Shown: positions 1,531 to 21,751 of the stretch, one piece after another
Numbering within the stretch: the first letter of the stretch is position 1
Layout: every line of letters starts with the position of its first letter
NCBI RefSeq assembly: GCF_006345805.1
Contig: NC_043005.1
Coordinates: 2,356,001 to 2,420,000 of the forward strand
Source: Octopus sinensis
Taxonomy: Eukaryota
Length of the DNA: 64,000 nucleotides
Direction of reading: 5' to 3'
Made by a program: the position numbers and the translations under genes
Notes under the pieces: model-generated
Told to the model about the DNA's origin: nothing
The model's database searches: none
Seen by the model: only the letters and a program-made list of their open reading frames with translations

Positions 1531-1566
<36 letters not shown>

Positions 1567-1638
1567 TATCTCACAAGGTAACCCCATAGAGCGGGCATAT
1601 CTATATTATCTATCTGCCAATCTAGCTATCTATCTACC

Positions 1639-1685
<47 letters not shown>

Positions 1686-1687
1686 AT

Positions 1688-1845: not shown

Positions 1846-1856
1846 TATGTATGCAT

Positions 1857-1887
<31 letters not shown>

Positions 1888-2635
1888 CATATATATATAT
1901 ATGTATGTATATGTATGTATATATACATATACATACATATACATACATTCACACACACACACACACATATAAGTCACTGTCAAAAATATTTTTGTTAAAG
2001 AATAATAAATTTGTACTCTCTAAAAATATAGAGTAACCTTCTACATTAATGTACAATGTATTTATTATAACTGAATATAAAAACACACACACATACCTAC
2101 ATACTTACATACATACATACATATATATACTGTTGACACACACACATACATACATACACACATACACTGTTGACGTCATAAAAATAAGCTTCGAAACAAT
2201 GCGAAACCCTGTATTTATATACTAAGAAATAGTATGTAACTATAGTGTTAAAATTCCTTTGACTATAAAAAGTCGAAGGACTCCTGTGAGAGCCGAATCC
2301 ACTTCTCCTTTAAACATGTCTGGCGTTGTGGACAAAGCAATTCGTTCAAATTTCTCTGTCCATTTTAGATACTTTATCCTTGCCAATGAAACTTGGAGGC
2401 CTTTGACATTTATAATTGCTCACATCAGAATTACAAAATATTTTTTCAAAGACCCTCATCAAGTACGACCTAATAACAATGCAAGTTTCATTAAGCATCA
2501 GAGCTGGTTGTTTAGGGATACGTTTTCTGGTCCTCGTAATAAACCTTGTTTGATAGAAGACTTTCTGCAGTTTTGGAAGTATACACGCACGTATAAAAAC
2601 ATACACATTCGTCTATTGATACACACCACTCATAT

Positions 2636-2887
<252 letters not shown>

Positions 2888-2890
2888 GAT

Positions 2891-3230
2891 GAAGGCGCAT
2901 GGCGCAGTGGTTAGAGCGTCGAGCTTACGATCGTGAGGTTGTGAGCTCGAATCCCGGACCGGGCTGCGTGTTGTGTTCTTGAGCAAAGGACTTTATTTCA
3001 CGTTGCTCCAGTTCACTCAGTTGTAGAAATGAGTTGCGACGTCACGAGTGCCAAGCTGTATCGGCCCCTTTGCGTTTCCCTTGGATAACACTGGTGGCGT
3101 GGAGAGGGGAGGCCGGTATGCATGGGCGACTGCTGGTCTTCCATAAACAACTATGCCCAGACTTGTGACTAGGAGGGTAACTTTCTAGGTGCAATCCCAT
3201 GGTCAGTGTCGTGACCGAAGGGGGTCCTGG
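2891..3230 (+). mobile_element. tRNA-derived SINE family C
   Basis: A box TGGCGCAGTGG and B box GCTCGAATCCC, followed by TTGTGTTCTTGAGCAAAG..TTTATTTCACGTTGCTCCAG, which is shared with copies at 8.4, 39.1 and 40.7 kb. Confidence 0.8.
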
Positions 3231-3261
3231 ATCCTGGATATATACGCAGAATATCTCACGT

Positions 3262-3650
3262 TGTTGCATAGTGAGAATCTGGCCTCCCAACAACGTGGTG
3301 CCGGGCTCAGTCACATTGCGTGGCATCTTGAACAAATGTTTTCTACTATAGTCTCAAGCCGACCAAAGCCTTGTGGTAGACGGAAACTGAAAGAAGCCTT
3401 TCGTATATATGTGTGTGTTTGTGCGTGTGCTTGTGTATGTGTGTCTGTGTATCTATGTGTAAGTGTCGTTTTGTCTGTGTTTGTTCCCCACCACTGCTTG
3501 ACAGCCGGTGTTGGTTTGTTTTCGTCCCCGTAAGATAGCGGTTCGGCAAAAAGAGTTTGATAGAATAAGTTTCAGGCTTTAAAAATACTGGAATCAATTC
3601 ATTCCACTAAAAATCTTTGAAGACGTTACCCGAGAATGGCTGCATTCCTC
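3262..3650 (+). mobile_element. SINE family B
   Basis: Body CTACTATAG..CCGACCAAAGCCTTGTG..GGTAGACGGAAACTGAAAGAAGCC, internal (TG)n, and GGTTCGGCAAAA..GATAGAATAAGT. Confidence 0.8.
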
Positions 3651-3787
3651 GTATAAGTAAACGCTTGTTTTTGCGGATTCCTTCATAGGAACAGAAATTC
3701 CCAGCCGGTTCCAAAGAACTGATTCGGCGCTTATCACTGAGAAGGCGAAATCACACCGAAAAGAGGGTTTCGAATCGCACTTTGTCC

Positions 3788-3952
3788 TGATTTGAAGTGT
3801 ATTGCGTTACACTTTTATATTGAAGCCGTTTGACAAATAGAGATGGATGAGTACCAGATGGGAAAATGATGATTGGTCGAACCCTGGGGAATGGTGCCCG
3901 AGCGGGTCAGCATCCCGACGACTAAAAGCAGTTAAATAGTGTGGAGGCGGGG
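3788..3952 (-). promoter_or_regulatory. Candidate RNA polymerase II core promoter (GC box, CCAAT, TATA, Inr)
   Basis: Minus strand order: GC box (GGAGGCGGGG on + at 3943-3952), CCAAT (3876-3872), TATAAAAG starting at 3819, then TCAG with its A at 3788, exactly 31 nt from the first T of TATA. Confidence 0.45.
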
Positions 3953-5756
3953 TGCGTTCGGGGGCGAGCGAGTGTGTAGCACAAAGAAACTTCCATGCAG
4001 ACACAAAGCACATTTCATATCAAACATAAACAAATATTACGTACAGAAAGACAACTGACGTATACAACCGAAACCAGCGCCCCCCCCCCCAAACACACAC
4101 ACACAATTACATCACCTTCCAATGTACACAAAACGCTATACAACAATCTGTCAACATCTTTTTATAAAGTTTTTCATTCTACAACTCTGTATCTCTCACT
4201 AAATTAAGTTATCCTTATTTAGTCCCCTTCTTTTTCTCTCTTCCTAAACATTCTTCCTTTTGTTCGTTCTCTTTGGTTTTCTTTATAAATTCATCTTTTC
4301 TTTTGTTTGTATTTTGTTGATTGTTTTGTTTTCTTCAAAGTCATAACGTCTTTTCCTTTCTTTTCTCCAGTTCTATTTTGGCTAAATTAAGATTCTGAAA
4401 CCAAACAGTAGTAACAAATTCTATTTTGTACTCCCCCTCGACTCTCCCTCGACTTTCCCTCGACTCTTCCCGATTTCTTTTTCCACAAAAGTATTTTTTA
4501 TTTAACCAAACGTATTTATAATTAGTTTAAATGCAAGTTAAAAATAAACGATTCAAATCCAAAAACAATTTAAGTGCATTTTAAAAATATTACAAAACAA
4601 TAACGACACCAATGACAACATATATCTAAAGAGAATTTTAAAACTGTTTTATTTGTCTGTTACGATGGAAATGGATAATTCCTTTCGATCACCAATCCAT
4701 TTCGTCTTAAAACCGAATGGCGCCGAACCAAAAGATTTCCAAGAAAGTTCTGCCAAATTTCCTGGCCCTGGTATTGTTGGACGTAGTAAAGTTGAGCTGA
4801 ACATAATTTAGGTACTTAATGTAGTTTACTCCTAGATCGGTTCGACTTAATCAATGCTAAAATAAAAGACAGTCCAGCTGTTATCACCCTGCCTTTATGT
4901 GTTTATATTTAGAACTACAGTATATATGGTTTAAGGGTGAGTTGGCTGCTTTCCATGTAGAGATACAAATATTTGAACCATTACTTCTTTGGCAGAACCC
5001 AACGTCCGCAGTTTTATCCACTAGAATACAGAATTAACATGATAAAACATTATTAATGAGACAGAAGCGATTGTCGGTTATGTATCGTGGAAGGCTTTGC
5101 AGATATTACTCATAATCAAGCATTTGACCAACAAAAGGAATGGAGTAATAATCGCTGCAATCAAGAATTATTTATGAGATTCAAATACACCACTGCATTA
5201 TATCTGAGAATCATTTGGTTCTTAGTTGTACCTATGAGTGATTTCGTCTGGTTATTTGTGCGGACGTCACATTGGTAAACTAATCTATTTCTCTTGCATA
5301 CATTTGAGAAATGACACTTTGTTCTATCCCTACAGCCGCATAAATAGTTAGGTGCATCTTCGTTCGTGTTGTATGGGGGGGGGCTAATGTTATTGAGATC
5401 TGCACCTAAGTTAGCAGGAGGCGCTGCGTTGGTGGACGGTTTAGTTCTATTAGTTGGTTGGTTTTATCTTTACTGTTCACAATCTGTCTAGTTTCACAGA
5501 ATTTGTCTAGTTTTTTTTTTATTACTCATTGTGGCTAAGTTATTTGTCAGACTGTAGCCTATTGGTAAATCGTAGATGCTACCTTCATCTTTGCTTCCTT
5601 CATCTTTGTTATCTAATTAAATTAAAAGCATACCAGAAAAAACCACGAGTTTCCCCTTGTTATTACATCCATTGTCTTCTATATAACCTAAACTGCGGTT
5701 TAACAACAAAACCACCTGCTTCCGAACAACCTTACCCATGTTATAAGCAGAAGCGA

Positions 5757-6283
5757 GGATGGGGCTTCCTGGAAAGTTCCCAGAAATTCTTGGAAAGTTC
5801 CGAGGAGATACTTTAGACTTCTCGGAAAATTCAGAGGACTTCATGGAAAGTTCCGGGGATATCCTGGGAAGTTCCGAGGGTGAGGCTTCCTGGAAAATTC
5901 CGAGGTTGGAACTTCCTTGGAAGTTCTGAGAATTTCCTGGAAAGTTCCGAGGATGGAGCCTCCTGAAATTCCACGGATTTTCAGCGAAAGTTCAGAGGGT
6001 GAGACTTTAAGCTTCCTTGAAACTTCGGAGGATTTCCTGGAAAGCCCCGAGGACGAGGCTTCCTGGAAACTTCCGAAGATGGGACTTCCTTGAAAGTTCC
6101 GAGAATTTTCTGGAAAGTTCCGAAGATGAAACTCCCCGGAAACTTCCGAGGGTGGAACTTCCTGGAAAGTTCCGATGATATCCTGGAAACTTCATCGGAT
6201 GGAACCACTTGGAAAGTTCCGAGGATGAGACTCATGGGAACCTCCGAGGGTGGAACGTCCTGGAAAGTTCCGAGCACTTCAAA

Positions 6284-6285
<2 letters not shown>
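5757..6285 (+). repeat. Degenerate tandem array built on TTCCTGGAAAGTTCCGAGG
   Basis: About 8 perfect GGAAAGTTCC and about 6 TTCCTGGAA motifs, plus many variants, in about 530 bp. Confidence 0.9.
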
Positions 6286-6357
<72 letters not shown>

Positions 6358-6369
6358 TATATACATATA

Positions 6370-6748
6370 GGCGCAAGAGTGGCTGTATGGTAAGTTGCTT
6401 ACTTACCAACCACATGGTTCCGGGTTCAGTCCCCCTGCGTGACACCTTGGGCAAGTGTCTTCTACTATAGCCTCGGGCCGACCAAAGCCTTGTCAGTGGA
6501 TTTGGTAGATGGAAGCTGAAAGGAGTCCATCGTATATATGTATTTACATGTATACGTGTGTATGTGTTTGTACCCCAACATCGCTTGACAACCGATGCTG
6601 GTGTGTTTACGTCCCCGTAGCAGTTCGCCAAAAGAGACCGATAAATAAGTACTAGGCTTACAAAGAATAAATCCTGAGGTCGATTTGCTCGACTAAAGGC
6701 TGTGCTCCAGCATGGCCACACTCAAATAACTGAAACAAGTAAAAGACT
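6370..6748 (+). mobile_element. SINE family B, near full length
   Basis: GGCGCAAGAGTGGCTGTATGGTAAG head, GGTTCAGTCCC B box and tail ACTGAAACAAGTAAAAGA. Confidence 0.85.
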
Positions 6749-7361
6749 AAAAGAGAAAAAGAGTATATACATATGTGTGTGTGCATGAATGTATGTATGT
6801 ACACTTAGATGAGTTTGTATACGTATATGTGTGTAAATATGCATGTATATGTGTGTACGAATGTGTGCATGCATCTATGTATGTATGTATGTATGTATGT
6901 ATGTATGTATGTATGTATGTATCAGTTTCCACTGATAAAAATATATCTGTTAAGCAATATGTGAAATCCTAGACGAGGATTCCACAATTCTTTGCTGAAC
7001 AAGCCTTACAAATGTTTTGCTTGTAATGATCAAATATTCGTGCTGTTCTTTAGCACTGTCCCTCCATCAAATCAACGTTACCTGGATGGGCGACACGGTG
7101 TGCTGCACGCCAGGTGTCGAAGGGATACCAGCGCCCTAACCATTTGATTCTTCTCGATGTGTACTCTTTTCCAGAGACTAGAGAGACTAGATTTAGTTTT
7201 CTTCTTGTCTTGGGAACTGGCCAGACGTCGAGGAAATTCCTGAACAACAGGTTAATGAAGAAACCGAAATAAAATACACTCTACCTCAGCGTTGAGTACT
7301 ATTTACCTGTTTGGTAGAAACAAACAAATACTGGTGTGTGTGTCTGTTTGTGTGTGTGTGT

Positions 7362-7409
<48 letters not shown>

Positions 7410-8394
7410 CGTTTAAACATGCATCTATACAGACACAGATATACACACGTGCTCACAACTAGAGAAATAAACATGAAACTCCTTTGTTAAACTTTCAATT
7501 AATTAATTAATTAGACAAAACAAACAAATTAGTGAGAGAAGCATATTTAATTGATTCATTATCGGCGTTCTGTTCAGATTGTTTATTTGGTTCTTTGGTT
7601 CTTTGGGATCGGAGCAAATACTATTGACGAGGATGTCGAGAATTTTGTTAGGTGTGTGTGAGCATATCTTCGTGTAAGCCTGTGTCCGTTTAGATGTTTA
7701 TGCGTAGGAGTTTGTTTTGGGTGGGTCGGTGGATGCATGTGTGTGTATGCGTGCGCGCACCTGTGATGTTTGCGTGTATGTGTGTGTGTTACAAGATGAA
7801 AAGTGGTGTTCACCTCTTCTCCATCTCAGTTATGAAGCCTCACAGATTGATGATGGGACAGGAAGTTTGGCATTGAATAGAAATCGGTTCATTAAAACCA
7901 TATGACCATCAACCGCAACTAACACACCACTACCGCCGCCATCACTACCACCATCACTACCACCGCTTCCACCAGTGCCATGAGCTGCACCTGAGTGTAA
8001 ACCACCACCAACTTCCTAAAGATTTCCTCTACCGCCAACACCGCCATTATCACCGCTGACACAACCATCATCAGCGTCACCATAAAGACCACCACCAACA
8101 CACCAAAAACAACGATCATCATCGTCATAATCGTCGTCGTGCAACCGACACTGGTGTCAGCGTTACCAACGCCGTTGCAGACACTACCGCAACCATTACG
8201 AACACCAACACCACACGTCACAAGTAATACTACAGCTACCACCATTGATGATGAGGAGGAGGGGGAGGGGAAGAGGAGGGGAGGAGGGAGAGGAGGAGGA
8301 GGACACTTCAGTGGAAGATAATGTATGAGTGTTCGGTATTGCTGAACGACCTGCAAAAATGATCTGTTTTGTAGTGATCAAATGTTCGCGCCGC

Positions 8395-8580
8395 ACATTA
8401 GCTTACTTTCTCCATCAAGTCGACGTGTACCTGAACAGGTAGGCGTCATGTATCGAAGTGATCGCAAAGCAACGTGAGATGAATTGTTTTGCTCAAGAAC
8501 ACAACGCACCAACCGGTCTAGGAATTGAAATCATGACCTCGCGATCGTGAGTGTAACATCCTAACAACTGTGTCATGCAA
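8395..8580 (-). mobile_element. SINE family C, 5' part
   Basis: Reverse complement of the family C head (GCAACGTGAGAT..TTTGCTCAAGAACACAACGC..CGATCGTGAG). Confidence 0.7.
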
Positions 8581-8585
8581 AAGAA

Positions 8586-9440
8586 CTCTAAAATCGATGA
8601 ACAACCTGATACGTCTGCCACAAAACAAGCAAAACGGATCGAGCAGACTGCAAAAAAGAACGGGTAGAAACAAATTGAGGGGCGGTGGAGCCAGAAGCCT
8701 CTGCATGGACAGTATATACTTCGAAGTCGAAATGCTGATGTAGACCAGGCAACAACCCATTGAGAAGCTCAGGACTGAAACCAGAGACTGAAGGTTTCAT
8801 AGTGGTGGCACAACATCAAAGCTTGCGCACAAAACACTACCAGGCTAACGCCCTTCAAAACGGTTCTGACCCTAAATGCAGATTCTGCAACACATTTGAC
8901 GAAACAATGGACCATCTCGTTTCGGGATGTTCTGTGCTGACACCAAACGAATACAAAAATCGCTACGATAGGGTAGGACAGTATTTACATAGAGAAATAT
9001 GTAAACACTACAAAATCAGCGCTCCTACTTACTGGTACGACCATCATCTTGAGTCAGTCGTTGAAGGTATAAACGTCCCTATCCTCTGGGATTTCCCAGT
9101 CAACACCGACAGAACGATCCAAGTCAATCGACCAGGCATAATCATTAAAGACAGAGAAAAAAATACTTGTAGACTAATAGATGTAAGTGTTCCCACTGAT
9201 AAAAATATATCTGTCAAGGAATTTGACAATTTGAGTCAATATAAACACCTGGAAATTGAAATACAAAAGATGTGACATATTAAAGCGAGAATTGTTCTTG
9301 TTGTTGTAGGTGCCCTAGGTATGATAAAAAAGAGATGTCAGAAACATCTAGATAATATCCCAGGAGAACCATGTCTCAAAGAAATCAAAGAGATTGAGCT
9401 GACGCGTACTGCCCACATCCTTAGAAAAAACCCTATCCGT
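8586..9440 (+). mobile_element. R4/Dong-like non-LTR retrotransposon 3' fragment (zinc knuckle + restriction-like endonuclease)
   Basis: LRSSGLKPETEGFIVVAQHQSL, CRFC..ETMDHLVSGC, ILWDFPVNTDRTIQVNRPGI, LIDVSVP..KE..YKHLEIEI, ALGMIKK; interrupted by stops. Confidence 0.9.
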
Positions 9441-9581
9441 TTAAATGTCTGCGTTGTATTCCATGAAGATATTTCGCTTCTGCCCCTAACACTTGCTCTC
9501 CCCAAGCTTTCCGTCATACTGTGGCATCTCTTATCCTTCACTCGCCCCAGAACGATGTAACAAACATGCAGATTAAAGGCA

Positions 9582-10063
<482 letters not shown>

Positions 10064-10112
10064 AATAATAATAATAATAATAATAATGATAATAATGATA
10101 ATGATAATAATA

Positions 10113-10145
<33 letters not shown>

Positions 10146-10185
10146 ATGGTGGTGGTGGTGGTGGTGGTGGTGGTGGTGGTGGTGG

Positions 10186-10231
<46 letters not shown>

Positions 10232-10354
10232 AAAAAAAAACTGCTGCCTTAGATATTCTGACTGATAAATGACAAAAACGAAGTAAACAAAAGACAACAA
10301 ACCCAGACCCTAGGGGTGTATAATAATGTACAAAAAGCACCAAACCAAAACACA

Positions 10355-12530
10355 AAAGACAAACATATGAATGAGAAGGAAGGCGAAAAAATCTAAAACC
10401 TGGACACAGTGAAGAAGAGCCTAATGATTATGATACTCTGAAAATGAGAATAATCAAAAAACTGAAAACCACAGATCTCAGAACGGACCACCGACCATAC
10501 CTCCCAAAAATCAAAATAGACAATAAAACAACATCAATAATAAATTGTATAAACCTGGTCGTCACGGAACTGATAGCCACAGAAACAAATAGCAATATCA
10601 CTGAGCTAAATGACATGATATAGGCAGCAGCGACAAAAGAAGCTGGATACTCCCTCGAACCCATCCAAGCAGGAGGACCACCACCCAAACAAACCCTGTG
10701 GATAAATAACATCCAAAACAAAATACAAGAAATGAGAAAAGATCTGTCGATTCTTAATGAAATCGGTAGACAATCAACGCTACTAAGCAACAAAAAGAAA
10801 ACAAAAATACTCCGCAAATACAACATCACAGAAAAAGATTTACCTGAGATAAAAGAAAAGCTAAAGCAGGATATCCTTGCCAAAGCACAAAGGATCCGCC
10901 GGGACGAGAAACGCCAACGTTTCTTTGAACAAAACGAACAGTTCAACTCCAACCCCAAAAAATTCTACCAAAAACTTGGCAAAAATAAAATAGATATCAA
11001 TGCAGTACCACCAGCAGAAGTGGAAGAATTTTGGAAAGAAATATGATCGGCGAAGGAGCAATTTCAGAAAAGGACTATCTGAGGAATTTCAACCATGTTT
11101 CGTGGTCTGTTAGCACAACAACTCCTTTATAGAAAGTGCGTCACTTTAAACTTAGAAACCTCCCAAAACTCCCCATATAACAAACCCAACTATAACAACT
11201 GAAGAGGTCACCCAGGCACTGCAAAGACTAAGCAACTAGAATGCACCTGGGCACGACAAGTTCCCCAACTTCTGGTTAAAACATCTGGCAGGAATGCACA
11301 AATAGCTGGCTGAAAACTTTAACGACATACTAGCAGAGCCAGAGACAATGCCTGAATGGCTCACGAAAGGGAAAGCCATCCTAATTACCAAATTCAATGA
11401 AACGGCAAAACCACAAAAGTACAGACCTATAACCTGTCTCTCTACAATTTACAAAGCCTTTACCACAATGATATCGCAGAGATTAAGCAAGCATCTGGAA
11501 GAAAACAACCTGTTTCCAGAAGCGCAGAAGTGATGCTGCAAGGGCTCATATGGCTGTAAAGATCAACTAATGATCAATAAAGCCATAACTGAAAACAGCC
11601 GCAGAAAGAAAGTTCTCAATATGGCCATGATCGACTACCGAAAGGCTTTTGATAGTATTCCCCACACGTGGATCCTCGAAACATTAACCATGATCGAGGT
11701 ACCACCAATAATTATAAAATACATAAGACATTCTATGAATACATGGTAGACAGTGCTACAGCTCCAAACAAAAGAGGGACTTGTGAAAACCAAAGACATC
11801 CCCATTAGAAGAGGAAAATTCCAGGGAGACACGCTCTCTCCACTCCTTTTCTGCTTGGCACTGACACCTCTATCTGACATGCTAAATAGATCTGGATGCG
11901 GATACAAATGTTACGGCAAAACAATCAACCACCTTTTATATATGGATGACCTAAAACTATACGCTACAAATGATAAACAGCTGGAAACACTACTACAGAC
12001 AGTTCATGGATTTACCAAAGAAATAGATATGAAATTTGGATTAGAAAAATGTGCCAAAGCAACCCTGAAAAGAGGAAAACTAGTTAAGAGTAGCAACATC
12101 ACACTAGATAAAACCAATGAAATAAAAGAATTAGACCAAAGCCAGGCATACAAATACTTAGGAATCAATGAACTAGATACGATACAACACACACAAATGA
12201 AAGAGAAAATAAAGAAAGAATACTATAGATGAGTTAGATCAATACTAAAAACAGAGCTCAATGCTAAAAACAAGATAATAGGTATTAACACTTTAGCCAT
12301 CCCAGTTATAAATTACAGCTACAATATCCTTAACTGGACACTAAATGAACTAACCAAAATAGACAGGAAAACAAGAAAAATAAATACAGGATTTATGATG
12401 CACCACCCAACATCTGACATAGAAAGGCTATATATACAACGTATAGGAGGTGGTGGAGACCTTATACAGCTAGAAAGCTATTCCAAAATAACCACCATAG
12501 GACTACAAAAATACCTACTTCAGAAGCAAG
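10355..12530 (+). mobile_element. R4/Dong-like reverse transcriptase pseudogene
   Basis: YRPITCLSTIYKAFT, IDYRKAFDSIPHTWI, GKFQGDTLSPLLFCLALTPL, HLLYMDDLKLYA, YKYLGI, HHPTSDIERLY; multiple stops and frameshifts. Confidence 0.93.
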
Positions 12531-12539
12531 CGTAGTATA

Positions 12540-13700
12540 ATCTATATTTTTATAAATTAGAGGGGGTTATATGGCCTGTTCTTTCTAGCTGTTTTAACTT
12601 TTGACCTAGAGTTATATGCATTTGGGTCTAAGCTGTCGTAATCAGGGCCTCCTGGGGTTCTAGTATAGTGCATTATGACCTGTTATGATTATGATGGTTA
12701 CCATGTCATTGTGATATGAGTTGAGATATATGTTACTTGAGCCAAGAATTAGGGATGTATTTTACTTGTTTGGAAAAGTCGCTGGCAGGGAGCGCTTGGT
12801 TGTACTATGGGGCGTGGTTATGAATATTTCTTCAGTGGATGATGTCATATTTACGAATTGAGATCCTCTTAACTATATTATCAAATGTGTATTTGTGGTG
12901 ATTGGAATTAATGTTTAAACATTAATTCCAATCACCACAAATACACGTCACTTTAAACTTAGATACTTCCCCAAACTCTCCATAAAACAAGCCCAACCAT
13001 TACCTTATCTAAGTTTAAAGTGACGTCTAAAAAATCAGTAGTTTTGTGGGAATTTTCAAAAGTAATGGATAGATTGAGGTTAGAGAAAAATGTGTGCAGA
13101 TCTTCCGGTGACCAGTAAAGTGTCCTCTCTGTATAGACTTCCCTTGATGTTAGGGAAGGGTATTCGGAGCTGATGGAGTAGGAATAGTCCAACGAGGTCG
13201 GTGACTTGAGGTAGAGTCGGATGATCCCATAGTAATGTCAAAGAATTTGCTATAGCTATTGTTATTGTTATAGTAGTTGGCTCAACACCAAAGTTTGTCC
13301 TCAAAAGAAATGACACTTTTACGGGCTTTAAGAATTATGTTAATTTCTAATAGGGTTAGGTTAGTTTGATTCCTAGCTAGTAGGGAGTTTGGTTTAGAAG
13401 TTTGGGAGAAATGGATAAATAATTATTTATACTAAATTTTAGGAATGAAGAAGTGTTTTTGTTCTTCAAGAAATGGAACCATGTTATGACTTCAAATGTA
13501 CAGGACCATAAGCTGACGTTCAATTTCTCCTTGAAGATTGGTATTATTTTATCCAGAATGTTCTTGCTTATTCTTCTCAGGTTAGATGTAGTAGGGCATA
13601 TGAAGTGCATAGATGGTTTTGTTATCAAGTCCTTCTTAAGATCCTTAAGGTTGCAGTGAGAAGATATAGGGTAGTAGGGTTCTGTATGATCGTCCACGTG
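12540..13700 (-). mobile_element. Penelope-like element RT remnant with an internal fold-back inversion
   Basis: SNLRRISKNILDKI..LWSCTFEVITWF..SFLKFSINNY, TDFLDVTLNLD and SNH..YNQAL motifs of PLE reverse transcriptases. Confidence 0.75.
12887..13026. repeat. Perfect 60-bp palindrome (12887-12946) abutting a 21-bp-arm hairpin (12945-12965 / 13006-13026)
   Basis: GTGTATTTGTGGTGATTGGAATTAATGTTT|AAACATTAATTCCAATCACCACAAATACAC; ACGTCACTTTAAACTTAGATA...TATCTAAGTTTAAAGTGACGT. Confidence 0.95.
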
Positions 13701-13757
13701 TAGATTGCAAGGTACTTATATAGCCTTACCTGCCATTTCTGGATACCAATACCTCTC

Positions 13758-13789
<32 letters not shown>

Positions 13790-13827
<38 letters not shown>

Positions 13828-13836
13828 GTGCGTGTG

Positions 13837-13878
<42 letters not shown>

Positions 13879-14449
13879 GATAATATCGATATTTAAGTAT
13901 CCATATTATGGATGTTGGTGTCTCTTAGACACCCTCATTTTTAATTATATATATATATATATATAAACATATACCTGTCTGTGTTTTGTGGCACGAAGCA
14001 AAGTAGGCCTTGCCATTCACTCAAAGTAACACATAATAAATAATCTACAAGCACTCAAGCAAACAGAATCCTCAACTTGTTACATTTGCCAAAAGTGTTG
14101 CAAGGCACCAGCAGGCATCAAGAGACACATTCGTGTCCACAGAACCTGATCAGTTCTTTATTTTACTGAACCATCATTTGTCGGTCACGACAAGAGAATC
14201 CATAACGTAATTAGCTACTCTACATTGATAAGGGGCAAAAAACCCGAAACCGGTCTTTGGTGGCTGAACCAGCAATGGGCAGTTGATGACCTCCCCTGTT
14301 CGAAGGTGTTACGGATGCACATCTGTGTGACACATAGCTAGCTAGAGGCGATGGCCCCGTGGAGATAATTAACGGCAGCATTCGTCCTATTTCTCTGGAC
14401 TGCAACGTTAGCTTGGCGATGAATATATATATAACTCTCTCTCTCTATT

Positions 14450-14513
<64 letters not shown>

Positions 14514-14574
14514 TGATTGTGTGTGTGTGTGTGTATGCATATGTATATATATATATATATGTGCGTGTGTATGT

Positions 14575-14607
<33 letters not shown>

Positions 14608-15178
14608 GAGGATAATATCGATATTTAAGTATCCATATTATGGATGTTGGTGTCTCTTAGACACCCTCATTTTTAATTATATATATATATATATAAACAT
14701 ATACCTGTCTGTGTTTTGTGGCACGAAGCAAAGTAGGCCTTGCCATTCACTCAAAGTAACACATAATAAATAATCTACAAGCACTCAAGCAAACAGAATC
14801 CTCAACTTGTTACATTTGCCAAAAGTGTTGCAAGGCACCAGCAGGCATCAAGAGACACATTCGTGTCCACAGAACCTGATCAGTTCTTTATTTTACTGAA
14901 CCATCATTTGTCGGTCACGACAAGAGAATCCATAACGTAATTAGCTACTCTACATTGATAAGGGGCAAAAAACCCGAAACCGGTCTTTGGTGGCTGAACC
15001 AGCAATGGGCAGTTGATGACCTCCCCTGTTCGAAGGTGTTACGGATGCACATCTGTGTGACACATAGCTAGCTAGAGGCGATGGCCCCGTGGAGATAATT
15101 ACGGCAGCATTCGTCCTATTTCTCTGGACTGCAACGTTAGCTTGGCGATGAATATATATATAACTCTCTCTCTCTATT

Positions 15179-15236
<58 letters not shown>

Positions 15237-15285
15237 TGATTGTGTGTGTGTGTGTGTATGCATATGTATATATATATATATATAC
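13790..15285 (+). repeat. Direct tandem duplication, unit about 730 bp, nearly identical copies
   Basis: GAGGATAATATCG at 13876 and 14608; GCTTGGCGATG at 14411 and 15140. The only difference seen outside the microsatellites is a 1-bp indel (AATTAACGG / AATTACGG). Confidence 0.95.
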
Positions 15286-15709
15286 ATTAAGTTATTTATA
15301 AATGTGTGCGTGTGTCTGTAGAATAATAAAGTAGTCATAATTTTGGATGATTATCTATATTTTTTTATTTATTTACATTTTTAACGCTCTCTTTCGTTAT
15401 CGGATTTATCAAAAAATGGTTTAAAGTTAAATTTCTAGGCCTTTTTATATACACAGAATTTTGTGGAGTTTGCCAAGCAAGGGAGGAGAAAGAAGAAAGA
15501 AATTTGTGAGGAAGAGGGGGAGGTAAAGAGGTGTGGCTTTTGTATTGGTATGGTCAGACCACACCAAGACAAAGCCACATATTGGCTCATATGAAGAAAG
15601 AATGGTAGACAGGCAGCCAGCCAGACAGACAGACAGATCGATAGATAAATGTGTGTGTGTATGCGTATGTGCCTGTGTGTATGTGCGTTGTGTGTGTGTG
15701 TGTGTCATC

Positions 15710-16029
15710 ATGCAATTATCGAATCGTGTAAATATAAGTCCGTTTCTTTCTGTTGTGATTGCAGGGAGTTTATACATTTATGCTGTGAGTGTTTTCGTTC
15801 CCGAACGCTTTGTTACCGCCAACCCCTTAAGTTTGTCCTTCATAAGAACGGCTTATACAACCAATAACTCAAAATGTGGCGTACAAGGAGTTATAATGAG
15901 CATCCATCCTCCCCGGGAGAAAGAGCATCGCTGTTCAAGCAGCATCATCAAAACATTTGGCTGTAGAGGTCAATGTTATTCATACACCGAAATGAACAGT
16001 AACCTCACAAGAGTCATTCGTTCCTGCAG
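15710..16029 (+). CDS. Coding exon 1 of a secreted 11-Cys cystine-knot protein (bursicon-alpha/Norrin-like)
   Basis: ATG at 15710 opens MQLSNRVNISPFLSVVIAGSLYIYAVSVFVPERFVTA|NPLSLSFIRTAYTTNNSKCGVQGVIMSIHPPREKEHRCSSSIIKTFGCRGQCYSYTEMNSNLTRVIRSC. This has a hydrophobic signal-peptide-like start and a CxGxC knot motif. It ends at a phase-2 donor CAG|GTGACT (GT at 16030-16031). The true start may instead be on an upstream exon using the strong acceptor TTTCTTTCTGTTGTGATTGCAG at 15763-15764. Confidence 0.88.
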
Positions 16030-16038
16030 GTGACTATA

Positions 16039-16076
<38 letters not shown>

Positions 16077-16097
16077 TCATTATTATTATTATTATTA

Positions 16098-16135
<38 letters not shown>

Positions 16136-16234
16136 TATTATTATTATTATTATTTTTTTTTTTTTTTTTTATTATTATTATTTTTATTATTATTATTTAT
16201 TATTATTTTTATTATTATTATTATTATATTATTA

Positions 16235-16305
<71 letters not shown>

Positions 16306-16326
16306 TTTATCATTATTATTATTATT

Positions 16327-17407
16327 CAGTAGTTTTATTTTTATAGCGTGCTTTCACTTCACTACCGAGCGCAGCTCTGTGTGCCTTGGGTATGTGCTGT
16401 GATTTGTTGTGATGCTCTGATGGTTATTGTATGGAAAGTGTTCTGCGTAGGATGTGTGCAGTGCCTAGTAGTGCAATTTTCTGTATGTTATATGTGTTTG
16501 TAAGTCCTGGTGCTTTTGTTATGTATTTGTCTGAATATTTTTTATCATGCCTAATGCACCTACTATGATAGGAATTGTTTCTGTTTTCAGATTCCACATT
16601 CTGGTTACCTCTATTTCCAGGTCTTTGTATTTTGAGAGTTTCTCCATTTCTTTTAGAGACACGTTGTCATCTGCCGGTATTGATACATCAATTAGAAAGC
16701 ATTTTTTTTCTTCATGATCTCTGACAACTATATCTGGTCTGTTGGCCTTAATTTCTCTATCTGTGTGTATCGCCATATCCCAGAGTATGGTTGCCTTCTC
16801 GTTTTCTGTGACCTTTTCTGGTGTGTGCCTATACCATCTTTTTTCTGTTGTTATTCCATAATGTTGGCATAGCTTCCAATGTATGTAGGTTCCAACTCTG
16901 TCATGTCTGTGAATATATTCCTTCTTAGCCAGGACTGGGCAGCTATAGATAATATGATTTATTGTTTCTTGTCCATCTCCACATATTCTGCAGCTACTTG
17001 TAATATTTCTTTTCATTACATGTTTTTGGTAATTTCTGGTGGGGAGGCTTTGGTCTTGTGCTGCAATTAAAAATCCCCCTGTTTCTGCTTTGAGTCCTGA
17101 GCTTCTCAACCATTGCTGGGATTTTTCTTTGTCTATTTCTTTTGCGTTTAGTTTAGTCCAGTATTTACCATGAAGGGGCTTTTCTTGCCATCGTTTTATC
17201 ATGGTTCGTTGCTGTTCTATTTTTAGTTTGGATTTCATTTGTTTTATAGCTTTTGTTGTTTCTTCATCTTCTTCTTCTTCTTCTTCATGTTTATTAGGTG
17301 GCATGATTTCTTGTTTGTATTTGTCAGCTTCCTTAAATACTGAGAACAGTTTTTTGTTTTGCTCCTGTTTTGCTGCTATCTGGATCAGTTTTCCTGATCC
17401 AGATAGC

Positions 17408-17410
<3 letters not shown>
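16327..17410 (-). mobile_element. Dong-like element, 5'-truncated (about 1.08 kb), flanked by (ATT)n, inside the intron
   Basis: Open frame with WQEKPLHGKY, WLRSSGLKAETGGFLIAAQDQSL, CRICGDGQETINHIIYSC, RPDIVV, IDVSIP, EKLSKYKDLEIE. Confidence 0.93.
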
Positions 17411-17450
<40 letters not shown>

Positions 17451-17462
17451 TTTTTATTATTA

Positions 17463-17538
<76 letters not shown>

Positions 17539-17869
17539 CATTATTATTATTATATGTTTGGCTTCTGCTTTGTATTTGTGGAAGTTGACTCCAAATCTCA
17601 CCCAGGGACCTCAAGAGACAACAAGTTAGAAGTACAAGTTGGTGTTATGACTAGGGTGCCATATATTTGGTTTTGCCCACGGTATTGTTCTAGAGAATGC
17701 CTAAGTAAATTAAAAGTTTTCTTTAAAAGTAATTTGATTAGTAGATGATTGTCTGATGTTAAGATGACTGTAAAATATGTTTTCTATTCTGTATATTTAA
17801 AAGTATTCTGACACTGTTTACGGATTAAGATGTTTGGGGGATTACATGGACAATATTTTACGTAGGATA

Positions 17870-18600
17870 TGCGCAGTTCCCATGAGCACTATTTATTGAG
17901 TTTCTTCCATTTGGGGATTTCCGGATATCTGAGCTAGGTAGCAATCAGCCCCTTTTGCTATCATTCCTAGGGCACCTATGACAACAGGTATTGTTTTAGT
18001 CTTCAGGGTCCACATTTTGCCAATTTCTATTTCAAGATCTTTATACTTGCTCAACGTTTTGGTAGGTCTTGAGAAAGACTTGTCGATTGGGACAGTCACA
18101 TCGATGAGGAAGCATGATTTTTGTCTGAAATCATTCGATATAATATCTGGCCTATTCGCATCTATCTTTCTGTCAGTTTGAGGAACATAGTTCCTAAGGA
18201 GTGAGATGTGATCATTTTCAAATACTGGAGGTGATTTGTGTTCCCGCTAGTTTTCATCTTGAGGTAGGTCAAAGCCTTTGCAAATTACCCAGTGAATATA
18301 CTGTGCAGCTCTATCATGCCTGAGATACTGGGTGGGCGCAAGAAGGCTGCACATGGAGACATGGTCGATGACTTTTTGGAGCTGGATGACATTCTACATG
18401 GAGAAATGTAAGTCAAGGTCACCAAAGCGTATAAAAAAAGATGGTGTTGAAATCCAACCTGAATGCCTAAATATCTATGCCCACTACCGTCGGGTTCACC
18501 CATGGTCTCTCCTGATGGTAATCTCAATCCTCTGCAGGCTGCTTTCTTCCCTGCAACATCTATTATCTTTACTTATTTTTCATTTTTATGGATAAGAACG
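17870..18600 (-). mobile_element. Older R4/Dong-like fragments (endonuclease tail and RT thumb)
   Basis: LSKYKDLEIEIGKMWTLKTKTIPVVIGALGMI; LPSGETMGEPDGSGHRYLGI. Confidence 0.8.
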
Positions 18601-18662
18601 ATATCTGGTTGTCTCGCCTCTATGACTTGGTCGCACTGCATATTAAAATCTCATATTATTAC

Positions 18663-18731
<69 letters not shown>

Positions 18732-18844
18732 CATTATTATTATTATTGTTATTATTATTATTATGTGATGAAAACTCACAGCTTATTTTGCTGGGTACGA
18801 TGGAAAGTGTCAGCTGTCCAGAGCCAGCAGACTAAGGTGACGTC

Positions 18845-19985
18845 TATTAACTGTCATGCTTCAAGAACCCTGCAAATAATTCTTGTAGTTACAAGCAATG
18901 CTAATTTTTGTAGGTGTTCTACATTTACATTTGTACCAATCTTTTTCTGCCATGTTGGTAGTTGAGTGCTGATACTTCCAATTGCACCAATTACTATTGG
19001 TATCACGTCTACTCTCCTCATTGTCCACAACCTTCGTATTTCCCACTTTAAATCGCCATAGTTGTTTATTTTTTCTTCTTCTTTCTCATTGATCCTGTTG
19101 CCACTGGGACATGCTATGTTGATAATAATACATGTTCTTTCTTTTTTATTCACCACAATAATGTCCGGTTTCCAATGTCTGGTCAGGTGATCGCACTGGA
19201 TCATTACATCCCACAGGATTTTGCAATTCTCATTCTCGGTGACTCCTTCTGAAGTTTGCTCATACCACGTCTTTGCTTTGATTTCCACAGAGTTCACAAT
19301 AGATCCTTCTTGCCACATTGTCATGCTGTCTTTTGCATTCGAGTTGTGCCAATTTCGGTCACTCGCTAACGGTAGTGTTGTCAATTCTACACTTCATATA
19401 ATTGGTCCTTAACGCTTGTTCCTGAGTGCTTCTGTCTCTATCTTTAGGTCACTCCTCCTCATTCATAGCCACCGGTCCTCTCTATCTGTCTTGACGTTTA
19501 CATCTCTTGCAAACCCACCGAACATTTTTCCTTCCATGCTTTTTCTTCTTTTTTTGTTCATTTCTTATTAAAATTTTTTCTTTAGTTATACAATTTTCAG
19601 TTTTCATGAGGTCGGTATTCTTCGTGTGCTTCAACAGTAGCTCCACGGCATCTTTTATATACCACTCCAAGCTGTTTTCCTGTGCTTTGATACAGTCCTG
19701 GCAAATGATCCAATCTTTCTCACCCTTTCCCCTGGACAAGTACAGCCTATCAGCACCACTCTTAGGGTGGAAGGCTCCGTGTACTGACAGCATTTTTCTG
19801 GTTTTGATATCTATTTTCTTCATTTCTCTCTTTTACCATTTTATAATTCCCGCTCCATACCGAAATGATGCTATCACCCACGTATTAACTGCTTCGATTT
19901 TATTCCATCCAATCAATTTTGGGCGCAGCACCAACTTCAGTCTTCGGAAATACGCCATCCTCAGTTGCTCCCTCATTTCGCTTTC
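18845..19985 (-). mobile_element. Divergent R4-clade element 3' part
   Basis: DIKTRKMLSVHGAFHPKSGADRLYLSRGKG; KILWDVMIQCDH..KPDIIVV..IACP..EKINNYGDLKWEIRRLW. Confidence 0.85.
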
Positions 19986-20079
19986 CATTATCTCGTTGCA
20001 CCATTATTATTTTCCGATTAATTTATATTTTATTTCATCTTCCGGTCGGGTCTCAACCGAAGACCTAAGGTACGTATAT

Positions 20080-21065
20080 ATTAGATGAAGAGAAACTTCC
20101 TGAGAATGTGGACGGTTGATATCAACACAAGTTTTTGAGTCTCATAAATTGTTGATTTCCCAAGGATCTGACCAAAAAATGTTTCACTACCTTTCTTGAT
20201 CATTCCCAGGGCACTTACAATAACAGGGTTAGTTTTGGTTTTTAATCTCCACATCTTAGATGTCTCAATCTCAAGGTGCTTATATTTGGACAGTTTTTCA
20301 AATTCCTTTGATGAGATGTTTCTATCAGTAGGCATTGTCATATCAATTAACAGTTATAGTTTTTGTCTTGGGTCTTTGATGACGATGTCTGGTCTGTTTT
20401 TATATTTATTTGATTGTTAGTATCCCATAGGATGGTAGCATTCTCTCCTTCAGTGACTGGATCTGGATGGTGTTCATACCAGTTTTTAGGATACGGAATA
20501 CCATAGTGACGGCATACGTTCCAATGCAGGTATTGGCCAACTCGACCGTGCCTCGTTTTATATTCTGTACGGGCAAGGACTGAGCAACCGTCGACGATGT
20601 GGTTGATACTCTCCAGTTTGTCATCGCAGAGTCTACACTTTCTCTCTACCCTATTATGTGTAACATTAGCTTGATCGTGAGGAGGCTCTGATCTTGTGCC
20701 GCTACGATAAATTCTTCCGTTTCGGCTTTAAAGCCAGCACTCTGCAGCTACTAAAGAGTTCTCATACTTACATCAGCTATGGTCTTTCTTGCCACAGTCT
20801 CCATATTTCCTTCAAGCTTTCCTATCTTACACTTTTTTGCTGCCTTAGTGGGTGCTGTGTCCCCCTTATCATCATCATAAATATGCTGGTTAAGCTCTCG
20901 TCTGTATTTATAAGCCTCCTTTGAAACTGAGTGCACCTTCTTACTCTGTTCATGCTGCCTTACCAGTTGTATCGTCGCTGTTACTTTGGATGTAGACTTG
21001 GAGTCCTATCGTGACCGTTTTATAGGACGTTTCAGATTGGATCAGACCTCTACCACCTTCCTTTT
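20080..21065 (-). mobile_element. R4/Dong-like 3' fragment
   Basis: KEGGRGLIQSETSYK; MPTDRNISSKEFEKLSKYKHLEIETSKMWRLKTKTNPVIVSALGMIKK. Confidence 0.85.
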
Positions 21066-21083
21066 TATTATTATTATTATTGT

Positions 21084-21118
<35 letters not shown>

Positions 21119-21519
21119 TATTTTACAACATATATATATGAGTAACAGTAGAGGTACATGTGTCAATCCATTAGGCCTTTCCTAACGACTCCTTTAATTG
21201 ATTAATGTAAACCTTACATCATTGTAAAGAAGCCGTTTTCGTCAGATGAATTAATGAACTTCAAAATAAAAGATATTCGAAATGATTTAATATAGCTGCG
21301 TCTAATTGTCTACATAAACTGCAAGAATATCATTCGGAGTGTACTTATGTACCAAGTTAGATATTTACATAATATTGTTGTGTGTGTACATTATTCCGAC
21401 CTAATGAGGTGCCTCAATTTAAGTAACTAATTCAACTGAATCTTACTTATGTGTGTGTGTCTGTGTGTCTGTGTGTGTGTGTATAGCTTTAAATAAAACT
21501 ATTCTCTTGTATTTTCCAG

Positions 21520-21709
21520 CTGTTGCCAACCCACAGATTTTGGTCTCCAACAAGCAATAATCAACTGCAAGAACGGTGAAAAAATGCGGAAGATTGTGAA
21601 ATTTGCCATTAACTGCCATTGTCGACCTTGTGTTTTGAAACCTAGGGTTACACTTAAAGATCTGCGCCTCATGCTCAGGATGTCCACCAGAAAACATTGG
21701 CCCAACTGA
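21520..21709 (+). CDS. Coding exon 2 (terminal) of the cystine-knot protein
   Basis: After the acceptor it reads (S)CCQPTDFGLQQAIINCKNGEKMRKIVKFAINCHCRPCVLKPRVTLKDLRLMLRMSTRKHWPN*, with TGA at 21707-21709. It supplies Cys6-Cys11 of the knot (CC-x13-C-x15-CxC-x2-C). It is absent from the ORF track because it has no ATG. Confidence 0.92.
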
Positions 21710-21745: not shown

Positions 21746-21751
21746 AATAAA
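21746..21751 (+). terminator. Candidate polyadenylation signal of the cystine-knot gene
   Basis: AATAAA 36 nt after the stop codon. Confidence 0.5.

What the first reader, a model, noticed from the sequence alone, without database searches (positions are those of the whole stretch)
15710..21709. Hidden two-exon gene for a secreted 11-Cys cystine-knot hormone with mixed bursicon-alpha and Norrin features
Seen: splicing 15710-16029 to 21520-21709 across a GT-AG intron gives a 169-aa protein. It has a signal-peptide-like N-terminus, two N-glycosylation sequons (NNS, NLT) and Cys spacing C-x18-C-x9-C-x3-C-x16-CxCC-x13-C-x15-CxC-x2-C. Known: 11-Cys knots of this layout define the bursicon subunits (LGR ligands that act as heterodimers) and Norrin (Frizzled4/LGR4 ligand for retinal angiogenesis). 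The motifs CxVxxVI, CxGxCxSY, RSCxCCQ and CRPC are bursicon-alpha-like. The 15-residue C8-C9 spacing and CSSxx..CxGxC match Norrin and the vWF/mucin CTCK domain rather than arthropod bursicon-alpha (about 20 residues). The x18 first loop fits neither. Inference: this may be a divergent or lineage-specific bursicon paralogue, i.e. an uncharacterised cephalopod cystine-knot signalling system, of interest in an animal with a closed circulation and camera eye.
Basis: partly seen in the sequence, partly recalled or inferred. Interest (0 to 1): 0.88.

Follow-up and report, generated by a model that had tools for sequence, protein, structure and literature searches.

The report
Octopus bursicon-like hormone gene, already annotated
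The finding is a real gene for a secreted cystine-knot hormone subunit, but it is the "bursicon-like" gene already annotated in Octopus sinensis, its true first exon lies outside the window, and its unusual cysteine spacing marks an old mollusc-annelid-nemertean branch of the bursicon-alpha lineage rather than a cephalopod invention.

Summary
The window is Octopus sinensis chromosome CM016867.1.

The start is wrong. Bases 15710-15764 are intron. Coding exon 1 (MRLPMAILLT) lies about 27.7 kb upstream of the window. The product is the 161-aa RefSeq protein XP_036361615.1, named "bursicon-like". Its O. bimaculoides orthologue is already listed as a bursicon ligand in De Oliveira et al. 2019 (eLife).

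The odd spacings, C1-x18-C2 and C8-x15-C9, are real. They define a clade in chitons, gastropods, cephalopods, annelids and nemerteans. Surveys variously name its members "bursicon-alpha", "bursicon-A2" or "bursicon-like". A profile of that clade built without cephalopods scores the octopus protein at 146 bits. Classical alpha scores 69 bits and beta 10 bits.

Chitons and nemerteans carry this type together with classical alpha and beta, so it is an old paralogue, not a cephalopod novelty. Similarity to Norrin and vWF is at superfamily level only (35-39 bits).

Octopus also has a partner-of-bursicon gene on another chromosome and a rickets/LGR2-type receptor. The most likely function is a disulfide-linked dimeric LGR ligand. 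That function is untested.

The parts
1..15764 (+). 3' part of intron 1. The whole intron is 43,507 nt. Coding exon 1 lies about 27.7 kb upstream of the window, at L001 10001-10031.
   Evidence: Window 1-31709 equals L001 37775-69483 at 100% identity. Exon 1 was found by tblastn and has donor GTAAGT.
15710..15764 (+). This stretch is intronic: a polypyrimidine tract and acceptor (..ccgtttctttctgttgtgattgcag).
   Evidence: The read-through is broken by a 1-nt indel and a stop in O. bimaculoides. The RefSeq model and the cuttlefish and Idiosepius transcripts have a different, conserved N-terminus.
15765..16029 (+). Coding exon 2 (265 nt, phase 1). It encodes residues 11-99: the end of the signal-type helix, sequon N44, Cys1-Cys5 with the x18 loop and its PP motif, and sequon N90.
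   Evidence: The translation is identical to XP_036361615.1.
16030..21519 (+). Intron 2 (5,490 nt, GT..AG). It holds an (ATT)97 array and decayed retroelement ORFs.
   Evidence: The orthologous intron in O. bimaculoides is 2,263 nt.
21520..21709 (+). Coding exon 3, including the TGA stop at 21707-21709. It encodes residues 99-161: Cys6-Cys11 (C.CC-x13-C-x15-CxCxxC) and the C-terminal tail VTLKDLRLML.
21746..21751 (+). AATAAA hexamer 37 nt after the stop codon. It is a candidate polyadenylation signal and has not been tested.
   Evidence: Read directly from the sequence.

Best explanation
Window 15765-16029 and 21520-21709 are coding exons 2 and 3 of the Octopus sinensis gene annotated "bursicon-like" (XP_036361615.1, 161 aa). 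Exon 1 lies 27.7 kb upstream of the window.

Shown here:
- The product has an N-terminal hydrophobic signal-type helix, two sequons conserved in cephalopods, and an 11-Cys CTCK-type cystine-knot domain, followed by a short amphipathic C-terminal helix.
- It is the cephalopod orthologue of a lophotrochozoan clade of bursicon-alpha-related subunits, called here the x18 type. The clade shares C1-x18-C2 with an invariant PP, C8-x14/15-C9, and a tail motif D-x3-L-[RQ]-x-[LM]-L.
- This clade has been catalogued as bursicon-alpha, bursicon-A2 or bursicon-like in gastropods, annelids and nemerteans.

Inferred, not shown:
- The protein is secreted by peptidergic neurons.
- It forms a disulfide-linked dimer through its odd cysteine count, most likely with the octopus partner-of-bursicon (beta) subunit.
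- It signals through the type-B LGR orthologous to Drosophila rickets/LGR2, raising cAMP.
For: Identity and gene model:
- 100% match of the window to CM016867.1.
- Translation identical to XP_036361615.1.
- Canonical splice sites.
- Intronless transcript contigs of the cuttlefish orthologue from 25 runs, and an Idiosepius transcript.
- Constraint on the CDS: 12 of 486 nt differ from O. bimaculoides.

Family:
- Pfam Cys_knot scores 30 bits against a cut-off of 24.
- A search of 1.84 billion representatives gave 12 hits at 1e-24 to 1e-14. All of them carry the x18/x14-15 spacing, apart from one x19 C8-C9 loop. The next hits score 51 bits or less and have the classical alpha spacing.
- Named members are Charonia "bursicon-alpha", Biomphalaria "Bursicon alpha", Urechis "bursicon-A2", and Littorina, Tubulanus and Lineus "bursicon-like".
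- Held-out HMM scores are 146 bits (x18), 69 bits (classical alpha) and 10 bits (beta).
- In the NJ tree the x18 clade is recovered in 245 of 300 bootstraps, and x18 plus alpha against beta in 300 of 300. The branching inside the clade follows the phyla.
- The AF2 knot domain has pLDDT above 90. The best solved folds are Norrin, C. elegans alpha2, gremlin and vWF CTCK.

Pathway parts in octopus:
- "Partner of bursicon-like" exists in O. bimaculoides.
- The rickets-type receptor Ocbimv22023790 is in the eLife source data.
- A burs-marked peptidergic cell type, PEP-Burs, is reported in the O. vulgaris paralarval brain (PMC9712504).
- Bursicons are heterodimeric LGR ligands with an odd cysteine count (PMC9910494).
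Against: - No biochemical or genetic test exists for any x18-type protein.
- Chitons and nemerteans have the x18 type as well as a classical alpha and a beta. The x18 type therefore need not be the beta partner. It could form homodimers or use another receptor.
- The beta gene is on a different chromosome (CM046609.1 against CM046610.1). Alpha and beta genes are typically close together (PMC9910494).
- Signal-peptide cleavage was not predicted with a dedicated tool.
- No octopus spliced read was inspected directly.
- I did not verify that "burs" in the octopus brain atlas is this gene rather than the beta gene.
Confidence: 0.75

Rival explanations
1. The x18 type is a functionally separate third bursicon-family subunit. 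It acts as a homodimer, or pairs with something other than beta, and may use a receptor other than the rickets-type LGR.
For: - Acanthochitona and Lineus each carry the x18 type, a classical alpha and a beta.
- The clade has its own loop lengths and a conserved C-terminal helix that classical alpha lacks.
- The gene is not linked to beta in octopus.
Against: - In the cephalopod entries of the eLife dataset only the x18 type and beta appear, which leaves the x18 type as the only alpha-like partner on record.
- It clusters with alpha against beta in 300 of 300 bootstraps.
- There are no functional data either way.
Confidence: 0.2
2. One reading: a cephalopod-specific paralogue with Norrin-like properties, acting on Frizzled4/LGR4 and Wnt signalling and linked to eye or vessel biology.
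For: - Foldseek's best solved matches are Norrin chains (E 2e-6, TM about 0.6).
- The C.CC-x13-C-x15-CxC spacing aligns without gaps to the vWF CTCK domain.
Against: - The clade is found in chitons, gastropods, annelids and nemerteans.
- Norrin and vWF score only 35-39 bits against the clade profile, against 146 bits for clade membership and 69 bits for classical alpha.
- No true bursicon structure is in the PDB. The chain 8enb_A, labelled "Bursicon", is C. elegans alpha2. Norrin coming first is therefore expected for any bursicon.
Confidence: 0.03
3. The two-exon model is right: translation starts at the ATG at 15710, from a promoter inside intron 1.
For: The frame is open from 15710 into exon 2 in O. 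sinensis, and the extension is hydrophobic.
Against: - The same stretch has a frameshift and a stop in O. bimaculoides, with 7 substitutions and an indel in 54 nt against 5 substitutions in the 265-nt exon.
- It ends in a textbook pyrimidine tract and AG.
- Transcripts of relatives carry the exon-1 N-terminus.
Confidence: 0.03
4. A DAN-family BMP antagonist (NBL1/gremlin-like) rather than a hormone subunit.
For: - Pfam DAN scores 27.3 bits against a cut-off of 22.
- The Elysia orthologue is auto-named NBL1.
- NBL1 and gremlin are among the PDB hits.
Against: - The DAN match overlaps the Cys_knot match and is weaker.
- Every named close relative is called bursicon, apart from the auto-named Elysia protein.
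- The C.CC and CxCxxC signature and the 11-Cys count match the bursicon set.
Confidence: 0.02

Closest known systems
Lophotrochozoan "bursicon-alpha / bursicon-A2 / bursicon-like" proteins of the x18 type. Examples: Charonia tritonis AQS80491.1, Biomphalaria glabrata BGLB014450, Lottia Lotgi1175598, Urechis QUP51993.1, Capitella CapteP217220, Lineus XP_064648490.1, O. bimaculoides XP_014770796.1 / Ocbimv22010474.
   Same: - Same 11-Cys framework, with C1-x18-C2 carrying an invariant PP and C8-x14/15-C9.
- Same tail motif D-x3-L-[RQ]-x-[LM]-L.
- The loop-2 sequon is shared with gastropods.
- 26-38% identity outside cephalopods, 60% to cuttlefish and 98% to O. bimaculoides.
   Different: The octopus tail is shorter. 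It ends in HWPN, whereas most gastropod and decapodiform members end in Gly. Cephalopods have an extra sequon just before Cys1.
Classical bursicon alpha (burs) of arthropods, bivalves, chitons, annelids and echinoderms.
   Same: - CTCK-type knot with the CxGxCxSY, C.CCQ and C.CRPC motifs.
- 11 Cys and a secreted precursor.
- Groups with the x18 type against beta in 300 of 300 bootstraps.
   Different: - Classical alpha has C1-x13-C2 and C8-x17-23-C9.
- Its tail is different, of the ..[IV]xPxE[FL].. type seen.
- The octopus protein scores 69 bits to this profile against 146 bits to the x18 profile.
Bursicon beta (partner of bursicon, pburs).
   Same: Same superfamily and an odd cysteine count. 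It is the presumed dimer partner and is present in octopus (P0113).
   Different: Beta has C1-x23-C2 and the KCEGxC..PSV and CxCCRE motifs. It scores only 10 bits.
Norrin and the von Willebrand factor / mucin CTCK domain.
   Same: Same fold, and these are the best solved structural and sequence neighbours. vWF has the same x13 and x15 spacings after the CC.
   Different: The similarity is at superfamily level only (35-39 bits). There is no evidence for Frizzled or LRP binding determinants. Norrin is known from vertebrates (my own knowledge, not tested here).

Membership tests
Bursicon family (11-Cys CTCK-type cystine-knot LGR ligands) | Eleven cysteines in the conserved framework, including C.CC and CxCxxC | tested here: met
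   The spacing is 18-9-3-16-1-0-13-15-1-2. The same framework is seen in 80+ relatives.
Bursicon family (11-Cys CTCK-type cystine-knot LGR ligands) | Match to the Pfam cystine-knot model above its curated cut-off | tested here: met
   PF00007 scores 30 bits against a cut-off of 24.
Bursicon family (11-Cys CTCK-type cystine-knot LGR ligands) | The nearest relatives in a whole-database profile search are proteins named bursicon | tested here: met
   The O. bimaculoides orthologue is listed among bursicon ligands in the PMC6660194 source data.
Bursicon family (11-Cys CTCK-type cystine-knot LGR ligands) | Cleavable signal peptide and secretion | tested here: inconclusive
   The N-terminus MRLPMAILLTGSLYIYAVSVFV is modelled as a helix over residues 4-21. 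No signal-peptide predictor was available.
Bursicon family (11-Cys CTCK-type cystine-knot LGR ligands) | Disulfide-linked dimer with the beta subunit | not testable with these tools
   The partner gene exists in octopus. Complex prediction and biochemistry were not available.
Bursicon family (11-Cys CTCK-type cystine-knot LGR ligands) | Activates the rickets/LGR2-type receptor | not testable with these tools
   The receptor orthologue Ocbimv22023790 is reported in the PMC6660194 source data. No assay has been done.
x18-type lophotrochozoan bursicon-alpha-related clade | C1-x18-C2 with an invariant PP in loop 1 | tested here: met
   CGVQGVIMSIHPPREKEHRC. The PP is invariant in 19 of 19 members.
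x18-type lophotrochozoan bursicon-alpha-related clade | C8-x14/15-C9 | tested here: met
   x15 in the octopus protein. The clade has 14-15 with one exception of 19. Non-clade proteins that keep an alpha-type tail have 17-23. A few short, unlabelled hits that end right after CRPC also have 14-15.
x18-type lophotrochozoan bursicon-alpha-related clade | C-terminal motif D-x3-L-[RQ]-x-[LM]-L after CRPC | tested here: met
   The octopus tail is VTLKDLRLML. It aligns with DIQRLRDLL, DINRLQQLL and similar tails. It is modelled as a helix over residues 144-155.
x18-type lophotrochozoan bursicon-alpha-related clade | Scores best to a clade profile built without the cephalopod sequences, and falls inside the clade in a tree | tested here: met
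   146 bits against 69 (alpha) and 10 (beta). The clade is recovered in 245 of 300 NJ bootstraps on the labelled set, but in only 75 of 200 on the larger unlabelled set.
Classical bursicon alpha (burs) | C1-x13-C2 and C8-x17-23-C9 spacing | tested here: not met
   x18 and x15.
Classical bursicon alpha (burs) | Best profile score is to classical alpha sequences | tested here: not met
   69 bits against 146 bits for the x18 profile.
Bursicon beta (pburs) | C1-x23-C2, the KCEGxC and CxCCRE motifs, and a profile match | tested here: not met
   10 bits to the beta HMM. The motifs are absent.
Norrin | Sequence membership above superfamily level | tested here: not met
   Norrin scores 35 bits against the clade profile, in the same range as vWF, NBL1 and gremlin. 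The fold similarity is shared by the whole superfamily.
Norrin | Binds the Frizzled4 CRD or LRP5/6 and activates beta-catenin signalling | not testable with these tools
   No assay has been done.
DAN family (PF03045) | DAN-domain match as the best family, and BMP antagonism | tested here: inconclusive
   The DAN match (27.3 bits) is above its cut-off, but it overlaps the Cys_knot match and is weaker. Function was not tested.

The most novel reading that the evidence does not exclude
The x18 type is a third bursicon-family subunit, distinct from classical alpha and beta, that arose before molluscs, annelids and nemerteans diverged. It has been filed under "bursicon alpha". It has its own pairing or receptor behaviour. 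In cephalopods it may have replaced classical alpha as the partner of pburs, or it may act on its own through its clade-specific C-terminal helix.
Probability: 0.3. Interest if true: 0.5.

Novelty: already known. Interest (0 to 1): 0.22.

Why it matters
As a gene discovery it matters little. The locus is annotated in RefSeq and the orthologue is in a published bursicon dataset.

The modest value is taxonomic. That branch coexists with classical alpha and beta in chitons and nemerteans, and its naming in the literature and databases is inconsistent (alpha, A2, bursicon-like, NBL1).

Nobody has tested which subunits pair, or which receptor they use, in any non-moulting animal. Octopus appears to have the x18 type, beta and one rickets-type LGR, and its brain atlas reports a burs-marked neuron type. 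That makes it a tractable place to ask.

Tried and rejected
- **Tandem duplicate (rejected).** seemed to show a second copy of exons 2 and 3 upstream. This was an artefact: /data/L001.fa holds both L001 and L002, and the 82-94% rows are the O. bimaculoides orthologous locus.
- **Linked partner gene (none found).** A weak minus-strand tblastn hit inside intron 2 (19700-19792, E 0.56) lies in a retroelement-like ORF and is chance. tblastn with Idiosepius beta and a chiton classical alpha found nothing in the window, L001 or L002.
- **Word-indexed protein search with a 50-sequence alignment.** It returned only 6 proteins, so it could not be used to list cephalopod paralogues.
- **Whether cephalopods keep a classical alpha (not settled).** The eLife dataset lists none, but it also lacks the O. 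bimaculoides beta that RefSeq has. Absence there is weak evidence.
- **The PDB "Bursicon" hit 8enb.** It turned out to be C. elegans alpha2, so it is not evidence for bursicon membership.
- **The bivalve "bursicon alpha 2" of Patinopecten and the Platynereis "bursicon-A-2".** Both are copies of classical alpha, not the x18 type.
- **NJ on the large unlabelled set.** It gave only 38% support for the clade. The labelled set gave 82%. No ML program was available.

Full report
**What is in the sequence**

It has a GT..AG intron, 11 cysteines spaced 18-9-3-16-1-0-13-15-1-2, the sequons NNS and NLT, and the quoted motifs.

Pfam places residues 73-146 in Cys_knot (PF00007, 30 bits, cut-off 24). A weaker, overlapping DAN match is also present.

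**Where the window comes from and what is annotated**

Window 1-31709 is 100% identical to Octopus sinensis CM016867.1 (locus L001). From GSLYIYAV onward the protein is identical to RefSeq XP_036361615.1, "bursicon-like", 161 aa. O. bimaculoides has XP_014770796.1, "bursicon", at 98% identity to that protein. O. vulgaris carries a truncated 107-aa model.

**Gene model**

- The RefSeq N-terminus MRLPMAILLT is encoded by a 31-nt exon with donor GTAAGT at L001 10001-10031. That is about 27.7 kb upstream of window position 1.
- Exon 2 begins at 15765, after ttgtgattgcag. Exon 3 is 21520-21709.
- The introns are 43,507 and 5,490 nt. The three exons give a clean 486-nt ORF.
In O. bimaculoides this stretch has 7 substitutions and a 1-nt indel and reads MQLSNYVNTFTVFPL*. 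Exon 2 itself has 5 substitutions in 265 nt.
- Contigs about 1 kb long from 25 sequencing runs carry the cuttlefish orthologue as an uninterrupted ORF starting MRFPMAVFII. This shows both junctions in mRNA of a relative. An Idiosepius transcript starts MQFPMAVFII.
- Between the two octopuses the CDS differs at 12 of 486 nt (7 synonymous and 4 non-synonymous codons). Intron pieces are about 82-90% identical.

**Which family**

A profile search of 1.84 billion representative proteins gave 12 hits at 1e-24 to 1e-14. The next hits score 51 bits or less.

Every member of the top group has C1-x18-C2 and C8-x14/15-C9, with one x19 exception. Almost all the remaining hits have the classical x13 and x17-23 spacings. 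A few short proteins that end right after CRPC are the exceptions.

Named members of the top group:
- Charonia tritonis "bursicon-alpha precursor"
- Biomphalaria "Bursicon alpha"
- Urechis "bursicon-A2"
- "bursicon-like" proteins of Littorina, Tubulanus and Lineus
- unnamed proteins of Patella, Haliotis and Owenia
- an Elysia protein auto-named NBL1

The source data of De Oliveira et al. 2019 (PMC6660194, bursicon-ligands file) add Lottia, Aplysia and two chitons. A related supplement (PMC6425005) adds Capitella. The eLife file also contains octopusBimaculoides.Ocbimv22010474, which is this gene's orthologue starting at GSLYIY.

An alignment of 19 members shows 11 Cys throughout, an invariant PP in loop 1, a loop-2 sequon shared by gastropods and cephalopods, and a tail motif D-x3-L-[RQ]-x-[LM]-L.

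**Membership tests**

I built HMMs from labelled sequences, leaving the cephalopods out. The octopus protein scores 146 bits to the x18 profile, 69 bits to classical alpha and 10 bits to beta. All labelled controls sort correctly.

Neighbour-joining on the labelled knot domains:
- x18 clade: 245 of 300 bootstraps
- x18 plus alpha against beta: 300 of 300
- cephalopods: 300 of 300
- inside the clade, nemerteans, annelids and molluscs separate
- classical alpha is not recovered as a clade (40 of 300), so the depth of the split is unresolved

On the larger unlabelled set the x18 clade had only 75 of 200 support.

**An old paralogue**

Acanthochitona and Lineus each have an x18-type gene, a classical alpha and a beta. 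The x18 type is therefore an old paralogue, not a cephalopod invention.

The "alpha 1/alpha 2" pair of scallops and the Platynereis "A-2" are copies of classical alpha. Database names are therefore not consistent.

**Norrin and vWF**

The AF2 model has mean pLDDT 83, and the knot is above 90. It has a helix at residues 4-21 and another at 144-155.

Foldseek ranks Norrin first (E 2e-6, TM about 0.6), followed by C. elegans alpha2, gremlin, PRDC, vWF CTCK, NBL1 and FSH-beta. By sequence, the clade profile scores vWF CTCK at 39 bits, Norrin at 35 and NBL1/gremlin at 33. These are far below the 69 and 146 bits above.

The PDB holds no true bursicon. The chain labelled "Bursicon" (8enb_A) belongs to the C. 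elegans alpha2/beta5 entry.

It reflects the shared scaffold, not a shared function.

**Pathway parts in octopus**

- A search with Idiosepius beta finds "partner of bursicon-like" in O. bimaculoides (P0113, 58% identity). It lies on CM046609.1, whereas the x18-type gene is on CM046610.1.
- No beta or classical alpha lies in the window, in the 37.8 kb upstream of it, or in the 45-kb O. bimaculoides locus.
- A rickets-type LGR of O. bimaculoides is in the eLife receptor set.
- The octopus paralarval brain atlas reports a PEP-Burs cell type marked by burs (PMC9712504). I did not verify that burs is this gene.

**Mechanism**

Bursicons are heterodimeric cystine-knot ligands of a type-B LGR, and their odd cysteine count implies covalent dimers (PMC9910494).

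By homology the octopus protein is most likely a secreted, glycosylated subunit that dimerises, probably with pburs, and activates the rickets-type LGR. This is inference. No x18-type protein has been tested.

The coexistence of three subunit genes in chitons and nemerteans keeps a homodimer or alternative-partner model open.

**Verdict**

The gene is real, the exon 2/3 join is right and the 5' end is wrong. The gene is already annotated and already listed as a bursicon ligand. It is not cephalopod-specific and not Norrin-like beyond the fold.

What remains of interest is that the x18 type is a coherent, inconsistently named, functionally untested branch of the bursicon-alpha lineage.

The rest of the window holds microsatellites and decayed mobile-element fragments.

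Noticed in passing
window 16030-21519 compared with L002 32404-34666: Intron 2 is 5,490 nt in O. sinensis but 2,263 nt in O. bimaculoides. The extra DNA, roughly 16077-17960 and 18713-21115, carries decayed retroelement ORFs. One is a 360-aa ORF with a zf-RVT match at 16519-17601 on the minus strand.
   Followed up: partly
window 16040-16326, 15650-15705 and 21450-21482: An (ATT)97 array starts 11 nt after the exon-2 donor. (TG)n arrays sit immediately upstream of both acceptors. The cuttlefish transcripts also begin with a (GT)n run in their 5' UTR.
   Followed up: no
window 28009-28680 (+), 11753-12232 (+), 29362-29895 (+), 8760-9275 (+): A piggyBac-type transposase fragment (PF13843, E 6.8e-45) and several reverse-transcriptase fragments (RVT_1, zf-RVT). 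No other host gene was recognised among the 75 ORFs of 100 aa or more in the window.
   Followed up: partly
PDB 8enb/8end/8enf chain A; P0111; P0017; Platynereis bursicon-A-2 compared with Urechis bursicon-A2: Naming traps:
- The PDB chain called "Bursicon" is C. elegans alpha2.
- UniRef calls the Acanthosepion beta-type protein "Bursicon subunit alpha".
- The Elysia x18-type protein is auto-named NBL1.
- "A2" means a classical-alpha copy in Platynereis but the x18 type in Urechis.
   Followed up: yes
C-termini of the x18-type proteins: Most gastropod and decapodiform members end in Gly (..IG..LLG..FGG..FRG), which could be an amidation signal. The octopus proteins end ..HWPN, with a shorter tail.
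   Followed up: no
L008 (O. bimaculoides CM046609.1) compared with L002 (CM046610.1): The partner-of-bursicon-like gene and the x18-type gene are on different chromosomes. This is unlike the close linkage described as typical for bursicon subunit genes.
   Followed up: partly
P0005 (Acanthosepion pharaonis model) and Idiosepius transcript 194294: Both diverge from the normal sequence part-way through exon-3-equivalent sequence, after ..ELRKV and ..GLQK respectively. This suggests a mis-annotated splice, a frameshift, or an extra intron in decapodiforms.
   Followed up: no
O. vulgaris CAI9728538.1 (P0004): The O. vulgaris gene model is truncated to 107 aa. It starts at the internal Met55 and so lacks the signal region and Cys1.
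   Followed up: no
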